Position numbers and translations under genes: made by a program | Notes under the pieces: generated by a model | The model's input: only the letters and a program-made list of their open reading frames with translations | What the model was told of the DNA's origin: nothing | Databases searched by the model: none | Part shown: piece by piece, positions 1,718 to 49,379 of the stretch | How the letters are laid out: every line of letters begins with the position of its first letter | How positions within the stretch are numbered: position 1 is the first letter of the stretch | Assembly (NCBI GenBank): GCA_977017575.1 | Contig: CDRNVI010000045.1 | Coordinates: 62,001-126,000, forward strand | Source: Paramoeba atlantica | Lineage: Eukaryota; Protista; Discosea | Direction: 5' to 3' | DNA: 64,000 nucleotides

Positions 1718-2198
1718 ATACAGATGCAGTTTCTGTACCTTGGTACAGACTTGCTAGCCCTTCTTTTCTTATGCTAGAAACAGGCATACATTTTCTCTTT
1801 CATGCCCGTTTCCCGTTCACGGCTAGCGGGAACTGTCCCTCTTTGTCGTGGAAGTAGGGGACGTATTTTTGACTCTTCATCCGTCCCCAGCTCACTCCTT
1901 GAGTGAGTTTTCTTCCCTTCCCGACCCTCTGTGTCTCGCGCTTTCCGGGGAGCCATGCACCATGATGGCCTCCCCGGAAGAACACTGGGCGTCGTTTTGT
2001 CTTGTCTTACACCGAGGCAGTGGTCGTTTGCATTGCGCCCCTACTGCTGCGTAAAGAGAGGCGAGTTGGATCCCTGTACCGACAGAGTCCGTGCTAAACC
2101 CTCGTTAGCGACATTCGCTGTGGGCGGATTATGTGCCAACCATATCGGGTGGTGTAGTAAGGATATTGTCTCTGCACAATAACAGGCGCATGATTATC
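1718..2198 (+). mobile_element. SL-headed short non-autonomous element, copy 1
   Basis: Starts ATACAGATGCAGTTTCTGTACCTTG-GTAC. Colinear with the reverse complement of 42422-42990 over ~480 bp, and both end ...GCGCATGA..ATC. Confidence 0.75.
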
Positions 2199-2903
2199 AA
2201 GCCAGGACCCTCACTGACGATCGGGGGTGCGAGATCCGAACGTCTCTACCAGTTTCCGCTTGTTCAAGGAGGCAACGACGTGTTTAACGACCACGCCGGG
2301 TACGGGAGCTGATGCCCTGCGGGAGGTTCCGGGTCGGTCCTCCAGACCTCAGACCTGCTCGGTGGACCTGTGAAACTGGCGCACACGAAACTTGAACTCA
2401 CAAAAATACGCTGCTCCTGTTCTTTGAACAGGAGCCCGGGGAAGCTTGTATCACACAACCCGCCAGCTAATCTCCTTTTCTCAGGCAGCAAGAGCTCGAC
2501 GAGCGGGTGTCGAGAATCAATTGTGTACAGGGCATTACGCGGTAGTTACATCATTTTTCAAAACCGTGATTTCCCTGCTTGGAACGCGAATGACGCTGCG
2601 GTAGGTGATGGGGAATAATAGTTGTCGGAAAGCTCGTATTGTGCTCGTCTTATAAAGCTTCATTTTCCGACACAACTTAAATCTCTGCACTATAAGTACA
2701 TGAACAATAAACTTCAGATTCGAAGTCGGGTGCACTAATGGCTAGAGCCGCCTCCACATGTCTCTGACTTCCCACATTGCTCTGTCCTCAAAAATTTTTG
2801 AGGTGTTCGATGTCACGGGGGTCTCAAAATAAATTCTGGAACAAATGGCTGAAAGGATGTCCTCTTGATCCTCATCATTCCCTACACGAGAGAACACGAA
2901 AGG

Positions 2904-4279: not shown

Positions 4280-5062
4280 TTACACCAGCAACACGGCGTT
4301 AATCACACCATCAAGTTCGGGATTATTCGTAACCTGGGCGTATTTCCCCCAGACCACCTTCCCGCTGGGGGTCACCAAGCCGAGCTCGCTGACATTCACC
4401 TCAATCACTGTACCCTTGGTGATCACCCCGAGGGTAGTGTACACCCGACTTTGGGGATTCTTCTTCACCCCTATGATCGGGAGCGTGAACGTGGTCTTCA
4501 GCTCGGGGTGCGTCACCTGGGCCTTCTTCTGTCGCAGCCCCATGGGACGAATAAACCGCTCGTATTTCGGCATCTTTCGCGTGAAACTCTCCCCCACGAA
4601 GGTGACCTTGTTAATCATCCGTTTCCAGGACTTTTTCCCCCGCTTCCCACTCGTGACGACCTGAAACATCTCGTCCTCCACCATGGACTTCACTTTCGGG
4701 ATCGGCACCGACCACTTCCCCGCCTTCTCCTTCCGTTTCTGTTTTAAACTGTTACTGAGCACTTTGCTGCGCTCCGTCTCGGCGCGGTCCATGAGAAACG
4801 CAGGCAGCGCCCCCTCCGTGGTGGGTTTGATCTTTTGGTGGGGCGCGAGTTTCTCTTGGTGGGCTCTCATGCGTTTCCGGATCTCCGCTTTCTCCTTGTA
4901 GCGGCGCGAGGAGGCGATCTTAGCCTTAAACCCCCGCGTGGTTTTGAGTTTCTTCGCCTGTTTGTGGTGACCCCGGGCGAGACGCTTTCGGGAGCGTTCC
5001 GGGGCGTCGAGCTGTCGCCCGTACCGTTTCTGTGCGAGCTCAATGTACTCGTTCTGCGGCAT
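4280..5062 (-). CDS. NSA2: ribosome biogenesis protein NSA2
   Basis: MPQNEYIE start (ATG 5062) gives 260 aa; [69 protein letters not shown]. Confidence 0.97.
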
Positions 5063-11868: not shown

Positions 11869-13821
11869 TTATGACGTTGGTTCTTGCTCCTGTGAGTCGT
11901 CGCTCGTTCCACCTGCTACATAAACTGTCACAGAGGAAAATATCTCAGAGCCTTTCTTGAGCATCTTATGAAAAGAAAGTCCCGCCTTATTGTCAGCAGG
12001 TATAAAGCAAAGGACTTCGTCCCCGTACGCTACATTTTTATATTTCCCATTTACTGACTCAACCTCTTTCTGTACCACAGGTTCCTCTATATTTTGGTTC
12101 ATTTTTTCACTAGTGCTTGCAATTTCTGTATCTTGGTCTACAGCTCTTCTGCTGACGACCTGCTTCGGCACCTGTTGGTGTTCATCGCTCTTCTCTCCTA
12201 TTTCTTGAGATTCTTGAGAATTAGGCATTTCATTATCATGCAGACTTTTATTCAGAGCTTGTCCGGTCGGATCATGGAAGGATGCGCGAATAATTCGTTC
12301 TCCTGCTTTTTTGTCTCCCGAATCGACAGATTTTCTGTCATATGCTGAAGAACGCCTATGTTTTTCTTCCGTCTTCGTCACCATACACAAAGCTTCATCA
12401 CCGTACAGGAAGTCGCTGTTATCTTTCCCTGTTGATCTAGATGGCTTTTTTGGTCTTAAATTCTCCTCGATGGGTTCGAGCAACTGCGTCGCCGTTTTTT
12501 CCGCAATACGTTTTGATGAGTTCTGGCGTCGGTTTTCAATGGAATGCGGCCACACAGGCTCTGAACGATACTTCCAAATTTCATATGAGCACTCCAGTGC
12601 TGAAGCGGACATCGCGCAAAGTGCCTCTTCGAAATTTGACGGAATCAGTCGTTTCAAGTGAGCGCAGGCTTCACTGGCAATTCCACGAGCACCGATTTCA
12701 AAGCAAAAAAGTTCACAATGTTTTCCCGTTTTCTTCTCTAAAAGCTTGCAAGCGGTTTGATATTTCAGGTGTTTGCTTGCGTGCATAAGCGGCAGTCGCA
12801 GTTCCCATGGACACGTAGCCTCCAGAATCGCCCGCGACCCGTCCTTGAATACAACATATCCGTCGGGGCGTAACCCGTTACACACACGTTTCAGCTCTGC
12901 GGGGATATATCCGTAATTCGGAAGATCCAACCAAAGAGTATTCAAACAGGAACTCTCACGTATTTGTTTGCCCAATAAACTTAGTACGGAGTTGTGTCGG
13001 TATGTGTATCGATCTTGATTCAGGGCTACTTTGCAGCGATTTAATATGTGCCGTAAGGTAGCAGGTTCTTTGAGGCATAGTTCACATTGGGGGTAACGAG
13101 GCCCTGCCTTTTCAAGATGGATCCTCGACGTATCCCCGATTTGGGTAACTTCCTGTCCTATCTTTTGGTTTGATTTTGTATCCAACCTGCTGTTTGGAGC
13201 ATCAGATATTATTTTGCTGGAGGCAGCGCGCAACTTTTTAACTGTCTTTTCAGCATCTAAGTGAATTTTCTCTTGAGAATGCATTACAGGAGATAACGCT
13301 TCATTGGCCCACTCTGCAACATTAAACGGTACACGATCAAGCGCTTTTCTGAAAGCTTTAACCGACATATGGTTTTCATCAATCGGTTGAGTATCCCACA
13401 CCTCCTTAGGGTACCACGAGTAGTACGCAGCAAGTTTTTGGACTTGTTTGTTTTTTGAAATATTTTCCGTAGTTTTTTCAGGGGAACATTTTTGCTTAGC
13501 GGTTGCTGGATTAGGAGCGTCTTCCATTGAAGGTATTGCTTTGAGTTCTTTAAGTTTGATACCATCTTTGTTGGTATGAAATGCCGGATTCTTCGGTGTC
13601 ACGTCTCGCTTGTTTATATAATCAATCGTATTTATCACGCGAGAGTTCTCAGTAAGATGTCTTTCCAGTTGAATGCGATGATTCACAGCTCTGATTTCCG
13701 ACTCCACGGTGTCTTTACACTCTGGTGAGGAAGAAAATAAGTACGTGCTATATTCCTTTGACGATGCAAGGATGATTCGCACTGAGGATAGGAAACATAG
13801 ACGAGGTGTTGCGCGCTGCAT
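11869..13821 (-). CDS. stand-alone CCHC + restriction-like endonuclease (RLE) protein, no RT
   Basis: CELCLKEPATLRHILNRC, RYTYRHNSVL, LRPDG, ILEATCPWE, HASKHLKY, CFEIGARG; aligns with the RLE at 37678-38523; uninterrupted 650-aa ORF with no YADD/RT motifs. Confidence 0.85.
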   Translation of the reverse strand: MQRATPRLCFLSSVRIILASSKEYSTYLFSSSPECKDTVESEIRAVNHRIQLERHLTENSRVINTIDYINKRDVTPKNPAFHTNKDGIKLKELKAIPSMEDAPNPATAKQKCSPEKTTENISKNKQVQKLAAYYSWYPKEVWDTQPIDENHMSVKAFRKALDRVPFNVAEWANEALSPVMHSQEKIHLDAEKTVKKLRAASSKIISDAPNSRLDTKSNQKIGQEVTQIGDTSRIHLEKAGPRYPQCELCLKEPATLRHILNRCKVALNQDRYTYRHNSVLSLLGKQIRESSCLNTLWLDLPNYGYIPAELKRVCNGLRPDGYVVFKDGSRAILEATCPWELRLPLMHASKHLKYQTACKLLEKKTGKHCELFCFEIGARGIASEACAHLKRLIPSNFEEALCAMSASALECSYEIWKYRSEPVWPHSIENRRQNSSKRIAEKTATQLLEPIEENLRPKKPSRSTGKDNSDFLYGDEALCMVTKTEEKHRRSSAYDRKSVDSGDKKAGERIIRASFHDPTGQALNKSLHDNEMPNSQESQEIGEKSDEHQQVPKQVVSRRAVDQDTEIASTSEKMNQNIEEPVVQKEVESVNGKYKNVAYGDEVLCFIPADNKAGLSFHKMLKKGSEIFSSVTVYVAGGTSDDSQEQEPTS

Positions 13822-39203: not shown

Positions 39204-39600
39204 ATAAAGATACAGTTTCTGTGCCTTGTTGGTACATTTTCCCTAGCTCATCCTTTCTTTTCCCGGAAACGGGCATACTCTTAACCTTTCATGTATGTCC
39301 GTTTCCGACTGGCGCTAGGGCCGGAAACTCTTCTTTCCGTTGAAGAGGGGCCGCAGCTTCGCACACCCGTGCAGCGGGTCAGACGCGCCGAGTGCCCCCG
39401 CTGGATGGACGCCAGGGAGAGCCTCTTAACGACGCTGCGTAGCCGAAAGGCTTCTTGCAGCCTCTCAACGACGCCCCCCGCAGTGGAAGTCCAGTGCCCC
39501 CTTCACCCCCCCATGCGCTGCAGGACCTCCCTGGAGGACCATGCGGCGTGGCCATAGGCCGAATCCCTGCGTACGACCGGCGTTGAATGCGCTGTAATGG
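39204..39600 (+). mobile_element. SL-headed element, copy 3 (diverges after ~150 bp)
   Basis: ATAAAGATACAGTTTCTGTGCCTTGTTG|GTAC at 39204-39235, then the conserved hairpin GGAAACGGGCATAC...GTATGTCCGTTTCC; 3' limit approximate. Confidence 0.7.
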
Positions 39601-39780
39601 CCGTTGATAACAGTTGTCGTACGTCAGGCGCTCACTCTTCAGGTTTTGCCCCGCATGAAATATAAATAAATACTGGAAAAAGTGAGAGAAAACCTACCCT
39701 CCTACTTTCAAGGCATTTAATTTGGGGCGCAGTACACCCAAGGGTGCGAACACATAATCTACAGTGTTCGTCAACACTTT

Positions 39781-40210
39781 AGGGACAGACCGGGCGAGGT
39801 CACAGTGGCAGCCGACTTCGAGAATGCCTTCAACAGCATCTCGAGGTCGGCCATCTTCAGGGCCCTAAAGGGAGACTCCAAGCTACTCCCCCTTGAAGGT
39901 ATCAACCTCTTCGGCTACGGGAAGCCTAGCACCCTACACCTTGGGGAAGGAATCTCCATAATGAGCTCCAGGGGGGGGTAAAACAAGGGGACCCCATGGC
40001 CCCAATCCTATTCGCCATAGGAATCCAAGGGGACATAGCCAAGGTGGCGGCTAAGTTCCCAGGCTCCCTCAAAATATGGGCTTACCTTGACGATGTCACC
40101 TTCGCGGGTGAACCAAAGGTATGTGGGGCGGCTCTGGAGGTTCTTGAGAGGGAGATCAAGCACCTTGGGCTTAACACGGGGTAAACTATAGTGGCCACCC
40201 GCCAACACAG
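39781..40210 (+). pseudogene. CRE/SLACS-clade reverse transcriptase fragment
   Basis: AADFENAFNSISR, (G)VKQGDPMAPILF, WAYLDDV, GLN; frameshift in a G8 run and a TAA; a related domain-1 relic lies at ~39085-39200. Confidence 0.8.
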
Positions 40211-40823
40211 CCTCTACTCAGAGTTCTCCGGAAACAGAATGGTTCACTCCCATGGACAGACATTCCCCTAAACAAAATAAACATTACTGGTGATTTTGCT
40301 CTATTATTTTGTTTTACTCTATTATTTGTAGGAACCCCGATTGGTTCGGCAAACCACTGCAGCGCTTTTCTCCACACGAATGCGTTACTCCATCTATCGC
40401 TATCTACATTGCGGACAATAAAGAGAATCGAAGACCCACAAGTCGCGTTGACACTGCTGTCTCTTTCATAAATAATTATATCTGAAAAAGCTCCTAAAAA
40501 TGAGAAAATGAAGACTTTTTTTGATCACTCATTTCCCATCACCGCGAGAATAAATATTGGATGGGGGACAATTCTGGTACGTGGGTCGCTGAAGTTCAAG
40601 GTGGTTTTATCGCTTTTTTGGCGTAATATAGAATTTCCATATCGAATATGGAAATGAATATTAGCCATCGTAAACGGATATTATCAAATTGATAATCTCT
40701 GTAGAATCTTTTCTTCATTTCATCATGAAAAGCGCTACAATTTTCCAAAATCGGCGACGTTTTACGAATCTTAAATTCGTACACCCCGTGAATACAAGTG
40801 TAAATCGGTTTTTTGAACCTCCA

Positions 40824-41513: not shown

Positions 41514-42421
41514 GGATGAAAGGGGTTAGAAAATAGGGCGCAGAAATAGAGGTTGCAAATAAATAGAACGGATGCGTAAGAATGACTGCTCAAAATAATC
41601 TTCCATCAGATGCGTTCGAATGTTACTGCATATTACTTTATTTTTACTTGTACCAAGTAGAACCAAACTAAAACTGATAAAATGATTCAAAAAGCTGTGT
41701 TTCATCGTCGCGTAGCTCACAACAGTCCTCACCGACAAACTAACATCAGGTTCCATCAACAGACGACCCCTCAATGTACTCCAAGACGCAACCCTTAAAG
41801 AATTGCTTTCAAATATCCTTCTCCCAGGGGTCTCCCAGGATAATGTACAGACCCATATCATCGATATTGGGACAAAAGTCTAGCAGGTAAAAAGTAGTCG
41901 CGGAAGGAAAATAAAGGTGGATTCGTGCGCTTCAGGACAGAGAGAACCCCGGAAAAATATTTTGAATCAGGTCGCAGTCCCCGAACGTTGTATACAGTCT
42001 CGTGAAAACCAGATTTTTTTACAAAAAAAAATAAAATATTTGGTTTTCAATATTTTGATAGCCCCGTGACTTTGCTCATCAAGAAATTTCAGAAAACAAT
42101 CAGAAAAATGTGCAAAGTCAGGGGGAAACTTGTAAAAAGTATGAACTTGTAAAAGTGTGAACTTTCAAAAGCGTAAGCATGAACTGAAAAAGGACTTTGA
42201 TAAAATACGTTACTGATTTGATTTCAACCTTTTTAATCAGATATTATATCCCAAACGCGGGGTGGATATTATGCTAAGACAATTCTGGTGAACTTAAACA
42301 TAAGAAAGTCGAATCTATGTGTGTAATTGTGCATGCCCGATAAGTCCTCGTTACCTTCCAAGTTCAGTATACGTACTTTTGAAAATTCAAACGTGCCTGA
42401 AAATCTGTTCCATTCCATTTT

Positions 42422-42990
42422 GATGTTCATGCGCTCGTTGGCGCAGAGATACAGCCCTTGATGCGACAGCCGATATCATCGGCACAATCCGTATTGACGG
42501 ATGTCGCACCAAGGGGGTTTAGCTCGGACTCTGTCGGTAGAGGGGGTCCAGGCAACTCGCCCTCTCTTTACGCAGCCGGAGGGGCGCACTGCAACCGACT
42601 CGGTCCCAGTCGGTAGAGGTGGTCCAGGCAACTCACCACCTCTTTACGCAGCCGGAGGGGCGCACTGCAACCGACCGCTGCCTCGCGATAATGCGAGGCA
42701 GAGCCACGCCCAGTGGTCCTCAAGGGAGGCCACCATGGCGCATGGCTCCCCGGGAAGAAAAGGGCGCGAAGGGAAGAAAGCCGGGGAGGGAAGAAAACCC
42801 ACTCAAGGAGTGAGCCGGGGAGGGGTGATGGGGTGGAAGCGCGTCCCCTACTTCGCCGAGAAAGAGGGACAGTTTCGGCCTTAGTGCCGGCCGGCAACGG
42901 GCATATAAAACAGTAAGATTATGCCCGATGCCGGGGAAAGAAAAGATGAACTAAAGGGAAAATGTACCAACAAGGTACAGAAACTGTATC
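42422..42990 (-). mobile_element. SL-headed short non-autonomous element, copy 2 (569 bp)
   Basis: Begins GATACAGTTTCTGTACCTTGTTG|GTAC; both ends fixed by the interrupted LRR frame; internal ~75-bp tandem duplication at 42530-42674. Confidence 0.85.
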
Positions 42991-43070
42991 TTTAGATTTT
43001 CCAGCGATCGTGGAAGCAACGTAGTCTCCACTTCACCGCGCAGCTCGTTCTTGGAAAGGTCCAACTTTGT

Positions 43071-44300
43071 GGTGAAACTGAACCAATATTCGCACTTTTC
43101 TCAATCTGGCAAAACTTTTACCTGAACGTTTTATCGCTCCTTTCTTTTATTCTGAATCATGGTTCTGCACATTAATTTTATATAAGCATTGTGTTTTTTG
43201 AATCCATTAGTACTTGTTTATTGCTCTTCTCACCTTTTAATGACGTGCACTGGGTGCGGTGGGTTCTCGTGCCGTTCGAAACTTACGATCAGAAGAATTT
43301 CTTCCTGGAGTGAGAATCAATGTCTGGACTGGATGAAAAACCACTCTCTAGTGGCGCAGAAAGTTATTTGCTACAAGAAAAATCACAGAGCTCCGCACAC
43401 CATGGCATTAGTCGGGAATAAATGGGTCTGCCCCAAGCATTGTAAAGGGAGGTACGGAGCTATGGGGCCGCTTTTGCCCAGCAAGAGCCAGCGAAGCGCT
43501 AAACAGACTCTCCTGTACATCGTTTTGTACTCTAGGGGTGGGCGCCACGCGTCTTCAGTGGCGGAAACGGAGTTAAGCGAAAAAACCGTGATTAAATTGC
43601 GTCAATGGCTGGATTCCCTCATGGCCACAGCGCATATACGCCGACGAGTTCGACTGCGATCCAAGGTGACCACAATGCAATGTGATGAAACTTTTTTTTC
43701 TGTCCGAAAGAGGGGCGGTTGCCATCGAGCAAAACGTGTTCGCCAAGATGGTAATCAAATTGCTCAGACGATAGCGGTCACAACGAGGGACAACAAATTA
43801 TCTGAAATTCTCATGGAATCTGTTCCAAATCGAACATCTCAGAGCCTTCTTCCGAACATCCAGAATCTAGCTTCGGGAAGTCGTACAAAAATTTGGACTG
43901 ATGGTGCCCGCCATAATTTGTCTCTCCGCGGCAAATATAAGTGGGAAAGTGTAAACCACAAGAGACAGTGGGTTACGGATGAAGGTGTGCACACTAATAC
44001 TGTGGAGTGCGCGAACTCCATGGTCAAGAAGCGTCTAAAGCGGGACGGCAATGTTCTAGGTCGAAAGTTGGAGAAGAGGGGGGATCGAATACAAGCATAC
44101 GCAGAGGTATGTACCGGAAGTTTGAAGTGCAATGGGGGTGATACACTGCTTCAAGTCTTACAAAATTTGAAGGAGCACTGCGTATGCCTCCATTTGTAAG
44201 AAGTAATCAAGTTTAAGTGGAGAAAAGTTTAAAGTATAAGCAAAAAGGGACGTGAAATTTTGAAAATTCATAAATTTGCGAATATTGGTTCAGTTTAACC
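43071..44300 (+). mobile_element. intact Merlin transposon (1230 bp)
   Basis: 24-bp TIRs GGTGAAACTGAACCAATATTCGCA and TGCGAATATTGGTTCAGTTTAACC (1 mismatch); 8-bp TSD AACTTTGT at 43063-43070 and 44301-44308. Confidence 0.95.
43240..44199 (+). CDS. Merlin/IS1595-family DDE transposase
   Basis: First ATG 43240; Cys-rich N-terminus; CDETFF, IWTDG, VNH..QWV...GVHTNTVE. Confidence 0.92.
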   Translation: MTCTGCGGFSCRSKLTIRRISSWSENQCLDWMKNHSLVAQKVICYKKNHRAPHTMALVGNKWVCPKHCKGRYGAMGPLLPSKSQRSAKQTLLYIVLYSRGGRHASSVAETELSEKTVIKLRQWLDSLMATAHIRRRVRLRSKVTTMQCDETFFSVRKRGGCHRAKRVRQDGNQIAQTIAVTTRDNKLSEILMESVPNRTSQSLLPNIQNLASGSRTKIWTDGARHNLSLRGKYKWESVNHKRQWVTDEGVHTNTVECANSMVKKRLKRDGNVLGRKLEKRGDRIQAYAEVCTGSLKCNGGDTLLQVLQNLKEHCVCLHL

Positions 44301-46588: not shown

Positions 46589-47604
46589 CAGTAAACGTCA
46601 CTATTCTCAGAATGCTCAGTTGTACGTTGACACAGAAAAAACGGCTTTTTCGTCACTATTCTCAGAATTGGTCTGTTGAACGTTGACAGGCACTTTTTCA
46701 TGAGGTCGAATCATAATTCCCATTTTTAAAAAAGAAAACGCTTTGCAAGAAAAACGTTAGCAGTGGAGCAACAGGCCGCTTTGGGTGCACAAAAATGACC
46801 CCCAGAGATCTCCAACTATCTCATTGGTTTGCGGAGTCGCCGCTCTATCAGAAGAACACCGCGCAGTCAAACAGCGCCAGTTTTCCTTTCGTGTAATAGC
46901 GTTTTGTTTTCAGAAAAACAAAGTTTCATTATTCGTAGTCACCTAAATCAATGTTTTCTTTTCTTTTTTAGGCTCACTAACATATTTATGTGCCTTTCAT
47001 GAATGGAAGAAGAGAAGGGACAACGATCAAAATGATCTCCAGTGATCCTCTGTGATCCCCATCTATCTCCACCTACCTATAGCCCCCAGTAATAGAATCG
47101 ATTTTGGACCATAAAGGCCAAATCTTTGTTACTGGGTGGGGTATGCTTTAGGCCTTTTTCGTTCATGAGTGCGTTGATTTTCTGTCCAGCCAACCCCGAA
47201 ACCACGCGATTCGGTACTGCACAACCACCCTCTTCCCGTCCAGACACCCCCCCTCCAACAACCCTCCCGAGACAAATCCTTGTTACTGTGTGTCGGCCCA
47301 AAAATGGCGAAATCTGGGGGGTCCATTACTGGGGGGGTATACGGTATCCTCAGTGATTTCCACCGATCTCTCGCATACTCTGCAGTGAGTGAAGATGAAG
47401 CAGTGAGTTAAGCAGTGAAAGAACGAAAGAGTTTTTTTTTGCAATTCTCATTCTTGAGTGTAAAATTTAATTGAACGTTGACACATGACCGAAGCTCCAT
47501 TCTCATTTTCCAAGGTGTACTCATTTTAGCGAGTTGTACGTTGACAGACCAATTCTCGCGACTCTCAGAATGGTTCGCGACTCTCAGAATGGTGACGTTT
47601 ACTG
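46589..47604. mobile_element. Tc1/pogo-like MITE containing a nested MITE (47076-47344)
   Basis: TA|CAGTAAACGTCAC ... GTGACGTTTACTG|TA; the inner element is a copy of 6274-6546. Confidence 0.8.
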
Positions 47605-47637
47605 TAATTATAATTATAAACTAAAAAGGTTTATAGA

Positions 47638-48420
47638 TTTTTTTTTTCCAAATATATATTTATATTTTCACCCCCGCTCCTAATTGTACTTACACAAGGA
47701 AAAGAAAAATGTTTAGTTGTGCTTAATGATGCTTAGTTTACTCGGAGCGAAGTCCAGGGTATGGCCGTCCTCAGGGTGTGGGACGGCTCAGCGGCCTCCT
47801 TCCCAACGTAGGAGGGTACCAAGGGGTTGACAATGGTTACATCAACGAGGACGGTCTTCCGCCCCAGCTGAAAACTAATATCCGGACCCCGCCCGTTGTC
47901 AAACTGGGGTTCACACAGGTCCGGATTAAACCCGTGGTTTAGGAGGAGCTTCCTTAATGTTTCCTTGCCCCCTTGTGGCGGGAGGCCTGGGTTTTACCCT
48001 TAACTTTTTTGCAATCCAGTGCGTGGATGCAAAACTCCTTATTACGGAGGGTTGCTCCACACACGCACTGGAGTTCCGGTTCCGAAGTAGGCCCACCCAG
48101 ATACCGGAGGCGGGCCGCAGTTTCCCACTGCGGGTCCCGTATATAGTACTCCGGCCGGTTGGGCCAGGCATTTATCCATTTCGTGGAGTGTATATCCTGA
48201 ATCTGTCTCATGCAGACCAACTGGGTAGCAGTGGGTTCTTTCCCCATGGCCGCCTCACACAGGAGGTGGCGCTGCTCCTTCGCCGGCACCCCTGGGGGTA
48301 GACCTTGCAGGGCGTTTTTAGCCTTGGCCTGCATGTCCACGGCTTTGTGCTCGAAGAGGATGGTCCCCAGGAAGTCCGCCGTAAAAAGGTTGTTCGAAAA
48401 CGGCGTGTTTCCCAAGGAAT
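47638..48420 (-). mobile_element. 5'-truncated CRE/SLACS-like retrotransposon 3' end with A10 tail
   Basis: WINAWP, WETAARLRYL, CVCG..HALDC, SRH, GPDISFQLGRKTVLVDVTIVNP (RLE); T10 at 47638-47647 on +. Confidence 0.8.
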
Positions 48421-48500
48421 TATTATTGATCTTTTGGAGAATTGATTTCCTTTTTAGTCGCTCCTTTACTGTAAAGGAGTGTAAATTACAGTCGTTCCTC

Positions 48501-48599
48501 TAGTCGCTCCTTTACACGCGGAGGTAGTTTTCAACTCGAAACGCGCAGCAGTGCTAGCCTCTAAGTTGAAAACAACCACTGCTTATAACGAAGCGACTA
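48501..48599. repeat. solo copy of the ~105-bp palindrome
   Basis: Same 27-nt spacer and core arms as 17541-17647, with paired arm changes TAGTCGCT/AGCGACTA. Confidence 0.8.
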
Positions 48600-48620
48600 A
48601 ACATGATTACTGTTGTGTAC

Positions 48621-49379
48621 CTATACCATCGCCGTTGTATTTGAGGGAACACCGTCGGAATGCCGCACCACGGCGCCATAAATCTTATACCCAACCAGAA
48701 AACAGAGTGCTAAAATCAGCAAACACAAGGTCGTCATAAAAAATTTATCGGAGGCAAGAGAGCGGACAAACCACTGCAACTCCCGTCGCACGCGGCGTAA
48801 ATGACTTTGCATTCGATCCAGCTCTCGATCAACCTCCAGTAGTGTCTCCCGTTGCTGTTGCAGACCCTTGGCCGCCTCTATAGCGTGTTCCTCTGAACGC
48901 TGCACGAGGCATTGTGAGCGATGCAGTGAGGCGAGCGTGTCTTGCTGCACCTCCCCAGCCTGCATCAGTGTCTTCCATGCCGAGGGCTGATTCGAGGGTT
49001 GATTGACGCCAGCGGAAAGGGGTTTGATAGGGGTGATTGGTTTCGTTGGGGATGTGGATTCAGGAGGTGTCGGGCTAGAGAGCTCCACGGTGGCCGTCGA
49101 CAAAGGGGCTGCACTCCGCTCGCGGAGAAGCGTTTCGAGTTCTCGTAGTTTCTTTTGATGTTCCTGTTGTTTGGCCTCGTATTGCTTAACTCTTTTCGGG
49201 GAATCGCAGCGGTGAAGGGCAATTTGGAGTTCAATGAGCTCTGATTTAATGAATTTTCGGGCAGGCTGATAAGTGAGATAGTCAAGATTGGGTTGAACGT
49301 CTGGTGAAATTAGACTCTTTTCCCATTCTGCAAGAGCATCTGTGATACGTTTGTCGTGGTAGTCCAAATCATCTGACAT
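48621..49379 (-). CDS. Qb-SNARE, NPSN/VTI1-like
   Basis: Helical N-domain, SNARE heptads (QQDTLASLHRSQ...LQQQRETL), LASDK then a C-terminal TM segment; ATG 49379. Confidence 0.85.
   Translation of the reverse strand: MSDDLDYHDKRITDALAEWEKSLISPDVQPNLDYLTYQPARKFIKSELIELQIALHRCDSPKRVKQYEAKQQEHQKKLRELETLLRERSAAPLSTATVELSSPTPPESTSPTKPITPIKPLSAGVNQPSNQPSAWKTLMQAGEVQQDTLASLHRSQCLVQRSEEHAIEAAKGLQQQRETLLEVDRELDRMQSHLRRVRRELQWFVRSLASDKFFMTTLCLLILALCFLVGYKIYGAVVRHSDGVPSNTTAMV

What the first reader, a model, noticed from the sequence alone, without database searches (positions are those of the whole stretch)
42422..42994. Dispersed family of short elements headed by SL exon nt ~12-39 plus the GT donor
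Seen: three related elements (1718+, 39204+, 42990-) start with (A)TAAAGATACAGTTTCTGTACCTTGTTG|GTAC. GATACAGTTTCTGTAC matches the T. cruzi SL 16/16, with the same 7-nt spacing to TTG|GTA. Copies 1 and 3 begin 28 nt before the donor (allowing for a TTG deletion in copy 1), i.e. nt 12 of a 39-nt exon. Established: CRE/SLACS/CZAR retrotransposons insert between SL nt 11 and 12 with a target duplication running toward the intron, and CRE relics lie at 39781 and 47638. Copy 2 has exact ends because it splits an LRR frame, with only a 2-3-nt A microhomology. Inference: a SINE-like derivative of the CRE 5' end that carries the SL target duplication and now inserts outside SL arrays. Each copy places a potential splice donor in the genome.
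Basis: partly seen in the sequence, partly recalled or inferred. Interest (0 to 1): 0.8.

Follow-up and report, generated by a model that had tools for sequence, protein, structure and literature searches.

The report
Spliced-leader-headed short retroposon in a kinetoplastid
This is a recently inserted copy of a 577-base non-coding jumping element that starts with the last 27 bases of the cell's own mRNA leader. It is moved by R2-like retrotransposons that carry the same leader piece, which most likely came from trans-spliced RNA and not from the leader gene.

Summary
Window 42418-42994 (-) is a full-length 577-bp non-coding retroposon. The genome holds at least 40 full-length copies at 94-100% identity and about 170 exact head motifs. 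I found the organism's own SL RNA gene. The element starts exactly at SL nt 12 and shares only nt 12-38 plus GTA with that gene.

A 99%-identical homologous locus on contig 54 is empty. It shows no target duplication, a 5-6-bp target deletion, and that TAAA and the terminal AAAA belong to the element.

Its likely movers are R2-like LINEs with a restriction-like endonuclease (RLE). They also begin at about SL nt 12, but with the leader joined directly to their 5'UTR at the exon end. They share the element's covarying 3' hairpin.

The "SL target duplication of a CRE" reading is therefore not supported. A relic of trans-spliced RNA fits better.

New here: the element and its partner LINEs carry an antisense copy of the leader. 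It is predicted to pair with SL nt 13-31, and the GTAC "donor" is its first arm. This may set the nt-12 end.

Other agents of this scan reported the same family on other DNA of this genome.

The parts
42418..42994 (-). Complete 577-bp non-coding retroposon (young subfamily); 5' end at 42994, 3' end at 42418
   Evidence: At least 40 full-length copies at 94-100% identity in G000. Ends are sharp in 29 independent flanks. The boundaries are fixed by the empty homologous site L075.
42968..42994 (-). Head: spliced-leader exon nt 12-38 (27 nt)
   Evidence: Identical to nt 12-38 of the SL RNA genes in L038, L039 and L061.
42964..42967 (-).
   Evidence: The SL gene reads GTAT here and then diverges. 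The same GTAC lies 4-16 nt after the leader in partner LINE 5'UTRs. The pairing appears in the consensus fold.
42891..42936 (-). Conserved 14-bp hairpin (element nt 59-104)
   Evidence: Predicted in all 10 subfamily members; one pair changes A-U to C-G in 4 sequences.
42850..42882 (-). Antisense copy of the spliced leader (SL nt 2-34), element nt 113-145
   Evidence: Local alignment to the reverse complement of the SL: z 5.6, 0 of 300 shuffles. Also found in copies 1 and 2 (z 4.9 and 5.2) and absent from 8 control LINE 5'UTRs. Long-range pairing with the head appears in the MFE and alifold predictions.
42715..42749 (-). Block homologous to the 5'UTR end and ORF1 start of the partner LINE (GGAGC-ATG ... 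GGCCTCCCT-GAGGACC)
   Evidence: 16 of 17 bases match in collinear position with the LINE ORF1 N-terminus, with TGA in place of CGA. It is the most conserved block among the subfamilies.
42523..42675 (-). Two tandem 77-nt units (91% alike); copy 1 has only one
   Evidence: Self-BLAST; alignment A1.
42418..42449 (-). 3' end: TCTCTG, a 5-bp stem-loop, ATGAACATC and a fixed A4
   Evidence: The motif is shared with LINE 3' ends. 96% of cells are paired, 3 of 5 pairs have compensatory changes, and 0 of 500 shuffles reach this. A4 is present in 23 of 29 copies.
42995..43068 (-). Upstream flank: short LRR-like open frame that the element interrupts (it continues at 42417 and below)
   Evidence: The empty site in L075 reads ...LENLHLEWNRFSG... 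in frame. Pfam LRR_1 gives E 0.0016, below threshold.
1719..2201 (+). Copy 1: older subfamily (72-74% identity), head from nt 11/12, same 3' motif
39205..39672 (+). Copy 2: a third subfamily (80% over the first 160 nt), with its own antisense-leader block; the 3' end coordinate is approximate
40531..40728 (+). 3' end relic of a partner-type RLE LINE carrying the TCTCTG...CATGA tail
   Evidence: blastn 77% to LINE nt 4687-4798; tail motif; C-terminal HRENKYWM remnant.

Best explanation
Window 42418-42994 (-) is a young copy of a 577-bp non-autonomous, non-LTR retroposon of an early-branching kinetoplastid.

Shown:
- It is non-coding and high-copy, with sharp ends.
- It begins with nt 12-38 of the host's 38-nt spliced leader.
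- It contains a remnant of a LINE 5'UTR and ORF1 start.
- It ends in a covarying stem-loop plus A4, a motif also found at the 3' end of R2-like (RT + CCHC + restriction-like endonuclease) LINE families that likewise begin at about SL nt 12.
- This copy landed in an LRR-like frame with no target duplication and a 5-6-bp deletion. The homologous locus on contig 54 is still empty.

Inferred:
- The LINE protein recognises the shared 3' hairpin and copies the element by target-primed reverse transcription.
- The leader piece comes from trans-spliced element RNA, not from the SL gene.
- The 5' end at nt 12 is set by a helix between SL nt 13-31 and an antisense leader copy inside the element. SL nt 1-11 stay single-stranded and are lost, by trimming of the RNA or of the cDNA flap.
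- The GTAC 'donor' is the first arm of that helix.
For: - Copy number and sharp ends.
- SL gene structure, with identity limited to nt 12-38 plus GTA.
- Empty site, collinear at 99% on both sides.
- Partner LINEs: a 4.8-kb element with RT and RLE whose best solved-structure match is R2 at 1.5e-32, covering RT to endonuclease. Heads start at nt 12 in 5 of 9 copies and at nt 13-17 in the other 4, and the leader is joined directly to the 5'UTR.
- Shared 3' hairpin with covariation.
- Genome-wide, 466 exact copies have the leader exon followed by non-intron sequence. A sample of 20 of the 413 preceded by CGA (nt 9-11) mostly starts at about nt 3, as expected for cDNAs of capped trans-spliced mRNAs.
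- A variant of the element has the leader re-joined 17 nt further in, right after a pyrimidine tract and AG. It again starts at nt 12.
- The antisense leader is present in three diverged subfamilies and in the partner LINE UTRs, and absent from 8 control LINE UTRs. Folds leave nt 1-12 unpaired.
Against: - There are no RNA data, so trans-splicing of element RNA, the RNA 5' end and any trimming are all unobserved.
- The helix has no compensatory changes, because the leader arm never varies. Its far arm also takes part in a rival local hairpin.
- The antisense matches in the LINE UTRs are short (z 1.7-3.5).
- Only one empty site was recovered.
- The start at nt 12 coincides with the nt 11/12 insertion site of CRE, SLACS and CZAR (PMC5814959). 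My model treats this as chance, at about 1 in 20-40.
- The upstream base is A (as SL nt 11) in 20 of 29 copies. This could instead reflect a target preference.
Confidence: 0.72

Rival explanations
1. The head is the upstream copy of a target-site duplication made when a CRE-like element inserted between SL nt 11 and 12 of an SL RNA gene. A deletion derivative kept it and now moves elsewhere.
For: - The start at nt 12 matches the published CRE/SLACS/CZAR site (PMC5814959, PMC12278014).
- GTA follows the exon, as it does in the SL gene.
- RLE-type LINEs are abundant in this genome.
Against: - Identity to the SL gene stops 3 nt into the intron.
- Partner LINEs have nt 12-38 joined to their UTR exactly at the exon end, in at least four subfamilies. 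This is unexpected for a staggered cut.
- Related LINEs carry nt 1-38 or nt 3-38 in the same way.
- The window insertion made a deletion, not a duplication.
- Nine SL genes, and 19 of 20 sampled matches to SL nt 1-11, are not interrupted at nt 11/12.
- The GTAC is explained by the antisense-leader repeat.
Confidence: 0.08
2. The leader was acquired by trans-splicing, but the nt-12 boundary is made by the LINE's endonuclease. The enzyme would retain an ancestral CRE-like specificity for the leader sequence and cut leader-containing cDNA or DNA between nt 11 and 12.
For: - The boundary coincides with the CRE-clade site (PMC5814959).
- It is specific to one group of RLE LINEs and their passenger, while poly(A)-tailed families keep nt about 3-38.
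- New elements often abut nt 12 of an older head (L021, L003, L037).
- Aborted 5' junction pieces also start at nt 11/12.
Against: - The one empty target (AATC/TGCATT/TGG) does not resemble the leader.
- No named CRE-clade protein appeared among the relatives found.
- The antisense-leader helix, which starts at nt 13, gives a simpler account.
Confidence: 0.14
3. The element is a SINE derived from the SL RNA gene itself (exon plus start of intron), as tRNA- or 7SL-derived SINEs derive from their source genes.
For: The leader is followed by GTA, and a GTAC...GTAC stem resembles SL RNA stem-loop I.
Against: - There is no intron similarity beyond GTA.
- The head lacks nt 1-11.
- The body holds LINE 5'UTR and ORF1 remnants.
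- No Rfam family was hit.
Confidence: 0.04
4. The copies are fragments of one longer element, or were spread by segmental duplication and not by transposition.
For: Some copies share flanks (L025 and L027). Contigs 45 and 54 are homologous over more than 100 kb.
Against: There are 28 different flank pairs with identical ends. A filled/empty pair exists within otherwise 99%-identical DNA.
Confidence: 0.01

Closest known systems
RIME/ingi and NARTc/L1Tc pairs of trypanosomes (non-autonomous deletion derivatives of a LINE)
   Same: A short non-coding element that keeps the 5' and 3' ends of an autonomous LINE and is moved by it in trans.
   Different: - The partner here is an R2-like RLE LINE, not an APE-type ingi-clade LINE.
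- There is no Pr77 head. The head is a piece of the spliced leader plus an antisense leader copy.
- There is no poly(A) tail (A4 only) and no target duplication.
- PMC12278014 describes non-autonomous elements only for the INGI clade.
CRE clade (CRE1/2, SLACS, CZAR)
   Same: Kinetoplastid LINEs with RT followed by a restriction-like endonuclease. They are linked to the spliced leader at position 11/12.
   Different: - Those elements sit inside SL RNA genes. These are dispersed.
- Here the leader is part of the element and is joined at the exon end.
- Insertion here causes a small deletion.
- No named CRE protein was found among relatives, so clade membership is open.
R2 elements and their SINE-like passengers (SIDE elements)
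   Same: RLE LINE; a precise 3' end defined by RNA structure and not by poly(A); little or no target duplication; host RNA sequence at the 5' end of the template.
   Different: R2 is specific to the 28S rRNA gene and gets its 5' end from an HDV-like ribozyme. No ribozyme was detected here, and the host sequence is a trans-spliced leader.
Dispersed SL fragments in Perkinsela sp. (Tanifuji et al. 2017, PMC5601477, Suppl. Notes 1.2-1.3), and SL relics in dinoflagellate retrogenes
   Same: Reverse-transcribed, leader-bearing sequences scattered through the genome of a trans-splicing protist, some of them next to retrotransposons. The exon is 38 nt in Perkinsela too.
   Different: Those reports describe decayed SL gene fragments and retrogenes. 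They do not describe a defined LINE/short-element pair with a fixed nt-12 start and an internal antisense leader.

Membership tests
Non-autonomous LINE derivative (RIME/NARTc type) | Shares 5' and 3' terminal sequences with an autonomous LINE | tested here: met
   5' side: SL nt 12-38, the antisense-leader arm and the ORF1-start block. 3' side: the covarying hairpin motif.
Non-autonomous LINE derivative (RIME/NARTc type) | No coding capacity; many dispersed copies with identical ends | tested here: met
   Copies measure 556-573 bp before the A4, with indels that are not multiples of 3. At least 40 are full-length, with 28 distinct flank pairs.
Classical SINE | Head derived from a Pol III gene (tRNA, 7SL or 5S) with an internal promoter | tested here: not met
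   No Rfam family matched at E<=10 apart from chance hits. The head is a Pol II spliced-leader fragment.
CRE clade (SLACS/CZAR/CRE1) | Site-specific insertion in SL RNA genes between nt 11 and 12, with a target duplication | tested here: not met
   Copies are dispersed. The empty site is an LRR-like frame with a deletion. Nine SL genes are intact. Unassembled SL arrays cannot be excluded.
CRE clade (SLACS/CZAR/CRE1) | RT followed by CCHC and a PD-(D/E)xK endonuclease (applies to the partner LINE) | tested here: met
   Translation shows CPICD...H...C followed by RPDG...E.T.P.E...K. R2 structures align from the RT to the C-terminus.
CRE clade (SLACS/CZAR/CRE1) | Phylogenetic placement of the RT with CRE1, SLACS and CZAR | tested here: inconclusive
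   The word-based search returned no named trypanosomatid CRE protein. The nearest named relatives are animal R2/NeSL-like proteins. No reference CRE sequences were available for a tree.
R2 superfamily (RLE LINEs) | Sequence similarity to R2 across the RT, linker and endonuclease | tested here: met
   9nl3_A and 9dou_A at 1.5e-32 and 2.6e-32 over query residues 772-1478.
SL RNA gene copy or pseudogene | Exon continued by SL intron sequence | tested here: not met
   Only GTA is shared. The intron-versus-body alignment is below the shuffle mean.
HDV-like 5' ribozyme (as in R2 and L1Tc) | Nested double pseudoknot starting at the cleavage site | tested here: not met
   No Rfam hit. A hand-threaded P1/P2 was not conserved across subfamilies.

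The most novel reading that the evidence does not exclude
Promoter-less retroposons in this polycistronic, trans-splicing genome may renew and define their own 5' end in two steps.

1. The old leader head is pyrimidine-rich and ends in TG. It could act as the acceptor for a fresh leader in every generation. Non-AG acceptors are common in the related Perkinsela (PMC5601477).
2. An internal antisense leader then folds onto SL nt 13-31, so that only the unpaired nt 1-11 are lost. This would give every new copy the same nt-12 start.

The antisense leader might also pair in trans with leader-bearing LINE mRNA, bringing the passenger RNA to the nascent LINE protein.
Probability: 0.25. Interest if true: 0.8.

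Novelty: new variant of a known kind. Interest (0 to 1): 0.58.

Why it matters
- **A new LINE/passenger pair.** Non-autonomous partners of RLE-type LINEs are rare. In the paper I read (PMC12278014), kinetoplastid non-autonomous elements are described only for the ingi clade.
- **What the leader head shows.** Retroelement templates in this organism are leader-bearing RNAs. This sheds light on how mobile elements get expressed in genomes without gene-specific promoters.
- **A testable mechanism.** The antisense-leader repeat offers a structural explanation for a precise 5' end made without a ribozyme or promoter.
- **Recent activity.** The insertion is polymorphic between two 99%-identical haplotype-like contigs and sits in an LRR-like frame, so the family is active or was very recently. 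About a third of the sampled copies appear, by eye, to lie at the same phase of LRR-like repeats, so it may be shaping a large gene family.
- **Annotation.** Hundreds of leader copies in the DNA can mislead SL-based gene and splice-site calling.

Tried and rejected
- **SL intron homology.** Local alignment of the SL intron to the element body scored below the shuffle mean.
- **Target-site duplications.** The longest shared words between flanks match the shuffled-pair distribution in 25 of 29 copies. Only L030 (18 bp), L022 (6 bp) and a few others stand out.
- **Target resembling SL nt 11/12.** There is a weak bias ([G/T]A before the element, a pyrimidine after A4), but the one real empty site is unlike the leader.
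- **HDV-like or other ribozyme.** Rfam at E<=10 gave only chance hits. A hand-threaded P1-P4 topology was dropped because the P1 and P2 partners are not conserved.
- **CRE naming.** The protein atlas gave only generic RVT_1 clusters. The word search gave no named CRE, SLACS or CZAR protein.
- **Organism identity.** I rely on untested earlier notes that call the organism an early-branching, Perkinsela-like kinetoplastid.
- **SLACS paper.** PMC330328 is not held, so the 49-bp (SLACS) and 29-bp (CRE1) duplication lengths rest on my memory only.
- I repeated the step reading the same stretches from the session files by reference.
- **Mistyped range.** One Pfam call failed on a range containing a stop codon and was corrected.

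Full report
**Observation**

The 16-mer with up to 2 mismatches occurs 5 times in the window against 0.03 expected.

BLAST of the third copy against the window's own 45.7-Mb assembly gave 40 scored hits at 94-100% identity, almost all spanning query bases 1-573, out of 523 first-look candidates. A 22-mer across the leader/GTA junction occurs 173 times.

In 29 independent flank pairs the element always begins TAAAGATACAG and ends ...GCGCATGAACATC, followed by exactly four A in 23 cases. Copies 1 and 2 of the window are older subfamilies, at 72-80% identity.

**The host's spliced leader**

The canonical AACTAACGCTAT start is absent from the genome except for one chance hit. Tandem 297-bp units on contigs 11, 24 and 3 are the SL RNA genes (L039:3494-3531 is one exon). 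They read an 11-nt start, then the 27 nt that head the element, then GTATGAG....

The element therefore starts at SL nt 12 of a 38-nt exon. After the exon it shares only GTA with the gene. The SL intron and the element body align no better than shuffles.

**Exact ends and mode of insertion**

The flank of the window copy has a 99%-identical counterpart on contig 54 (L075). It is collinear for 1.5 kb on each side and lacks the element.
- Empty site: ...AAAATC TGCATT TGGAATGG...
- Filled site: ...AAAATC [577 bp, window 42994 to 42418] TGGAATGG...

So TAAA and the terminal AAAA belong to the element. There is no target duplication, and 5-6 bp of target were lost, with at most a single T shared. 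The empty site reads through an LRR-like frame (...LENLHLEWNRFSG...), with only a weak Pfam LRR hit.

Genome-wide, the flanks show no duplications beyond chance in 25 of 29 copies. This pattern is typical of RLE (R2-like) elements. It does not match the long duplications I recall for SLACS and CRE1, which I could not re-read.

Contigs 45 and 54 are homologous over more than 100 kb. The insertion is therefore polymorphic between haplotypes or very recent duplicates.

**The movers**

The genome has about 1,850 RT candidates. A 4.8-kb LINE lying just upstream of one copy (L040) contains:
- an ORF1 with zinc knuckles;
- an RT (Pfam 1.6e-34);
- a CCHC motif and an RPD...E.T.P.E...K endonuclease.

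An intact relative (L072, 1,528 aa) aligns with solved R2 proteins from the RT to the C-terminus at 1.5e-32.

Nine copies of the L040 family start at SL nt 12 (five copies) or nt 13-17 (four copies). In all of them the leader is joined directly, at exon nt 38, to the LINE 5'UTR.

Their 3' ends carry TCTCTG, a 5-bp stem, a loop, the return stem and ATGA. The short element and its subfamilies have the same motif. In an alignment of 11 tails, 96% of cells pair, 3 of 5 pairs show compensatory changes, and 0 of 500 shuffles reach that.

The element also keeps a remnant of the LINE 5'UTR end and ORF1 start. This is a 16-of-17 match in collinear position, with a stop codon where the LINE has CGA.

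The element is therefore a 5'-plus-3' derivative and passenger of these LINEs. CRE-clade membership of the LINEs is open, because no named CRE, SLACS or CZAR protein appeared among the relatives.

**Where the leader piece comes from**

Across the genome, 466 exact copies of nt 12-38 are followed by something other than the intron. Of these, 413 are preceded by CGA, matching SL nt 9-11.

Sampled cases belong to at least 15 different 5'UTRs. Many follow the poly(A) tail of another element. Most begin at about nt 3, and some at nt 1. This is what cDNAs of capped, trans-spliced mRNAs should look like.

Two copies of the short element (L028 and L030, the only two in the genome) have the leader joined 17 nt further in, immediately after a pyrimidine tract and AG. 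They again start at nt 12. This looks like a fresh trans-splicing event.

All nine SL genes inspected are uninterrupted. Of 20 sampled matches to SL nt 1-11, 19 continue with leader sequence (some after a short stutter repeat), none is followed by an element 5' end, and one is a chance match.

These facts favour a trans-spliced RNA origin over a target duplication from the SL gene.

**The GTAC and the nt-12 start**

The element body contains an antisense copy of SL nt 2-34 (window 42850-42882):
- z 5.6, with 0 of 300 shuffles reaching the score;
- also present in copies 1 and 2, which retain different matching positions;
- absent from eight control LINE 5'UTRs (z -1.2 to 1.0).

The partner LINE 5'UTRs hold a contiguous antisense copy of nt 13-31, reading GTAC-TAAACT-TATCTTT. 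The L072 family has an exact 11-mer against nt 15-25.

GTAC is its own complement and pairs with SL nt 28-31. It lies 16, 13 or 4 nt after the leader in the LINE subfamilies and 0 nt after it in the short element.

Folding the full leader plus each 5' region leaves nt 1-11/12 unpaired and nt 13-31 paired in the short element and two of the three partner LINE families folded; the L072 family did not show it. The four poly(A)-tailed LINE families used as controls did not show it either. RNAalifold on ten subfamily members predicts the same long-range helix.

I infer that this helix sets the 5' end. The evidence has limits. The helix shows no compensatory changes, because the leader arm is invariant, and its far arm also forms a local hairpin.

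The coincidence with the CRE/SLACS/CZAR site between nt 11 and 12 (PMC5814959, PMC12278014) remains unexplained under this model. An endonuclease-based origin of the boundary is kept as a rival.

Odd 5' junctions of the form [target][partial head][target][full head] also begin their partial heads at nt 11/12.

**Comparison with known systems and novelty**

The element works like RIME/ingi or NARTc/L1Tc. It differs in four ways: the partner is an R2-like RLE LINE, the head is leader-derived, there is no poly(A) tail, and there is no target duplication.

Perkinsela sp. was reported to have hundreds of dispersed SL fragments, some next to retrotransposons, and a 38-nt exon (PMC5601477, Suppl. Notes 1.2-1.3). 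I found no description of a defined pair like this one, or of an antisense leader, in the searchable library.

Other agents of this scan had already reported the family on other DNA of this genome and reached the same main conclusion. None of the notes I retrieved mentions the empty site, and a word search for the antisense-leader repeat found nothing.

**Tool notes**

Noticed in passing
L042-L060, L090-L109 (e.g. G000:C1:9751, 14844, 19937, 25029): Many poly(A)-tailed retroelement families carry an almost complete leader (from about nt 3, some from nt 1) joined to their 5'UTR. They often sit directly after another element's poly(A) tail, and on contig 1 they form a head-to-tail array with a 5,093-bp period.
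   Followed up: partly
L012, L023, L024, L006, L041, L067, L072, L093, L096, L103, L107 (5' junctions): Stuttered 5' junctions of the form [few target bases][partial leader piece][same target bases][full head]. L098 has a snap-back inverted copy of SL nt 12-32 directly upstream of the head. These look like template switching at the 5' end of the RNA.
   Followed up: partly
L039 (G000:C11:1-8000): SL RNA genes lie in a 2.6-2.9-kb higher-order repeat holding one or two 297-bp units. In each pair the second gene has A-to-C at exon nt 30 (GTCC in place of GTAC).
   Followed up: no
window 43071-43400: The 330 bp just upstream of the LRR-like fragment form another sharply bounded repeat, with at least 10 copies at 96-99% identity elsewhere in the genome.
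   Followed up: no
flanks of L001, L007, L009, L012, L018, L021, L022, L026: By eye, about a third of the sampled copies lie in LRR-like frames at the same phase of the repeat, just before x-L-x-x-N-x-L/F-x-G. This could be a target preference or simply reflect the abundance of such genes; it was not tested.
   Followed up: partly
window 2469-2715 and 12550-13086: An RLE LINE C-terminal fragment with its 3' tail motif lies about 270 bp downstream of copy 1. A separate endonuclease-only homologue (37% identity to the LINE C-terminus) lies at 12550-13086 (-).
   Followed up: no
window 39781-40200 and 47400-48700: A decayed RT with a YLDD box, from a different LINE lineage than the FADD-type partner, and on the minus strand a decayed RLE with RPD...DVT.
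   Followed up: partly
G000 contigs 45 and 54: The two contigs are collinear in opposite orientation at about 99% identity over more than 100 kb (C45:104995 with C54:311624; C45:212262 with C54:201416). They are probably haplotigs, which makes retroposon presence/absence calls possible genome-wide.
   Followed up: partly
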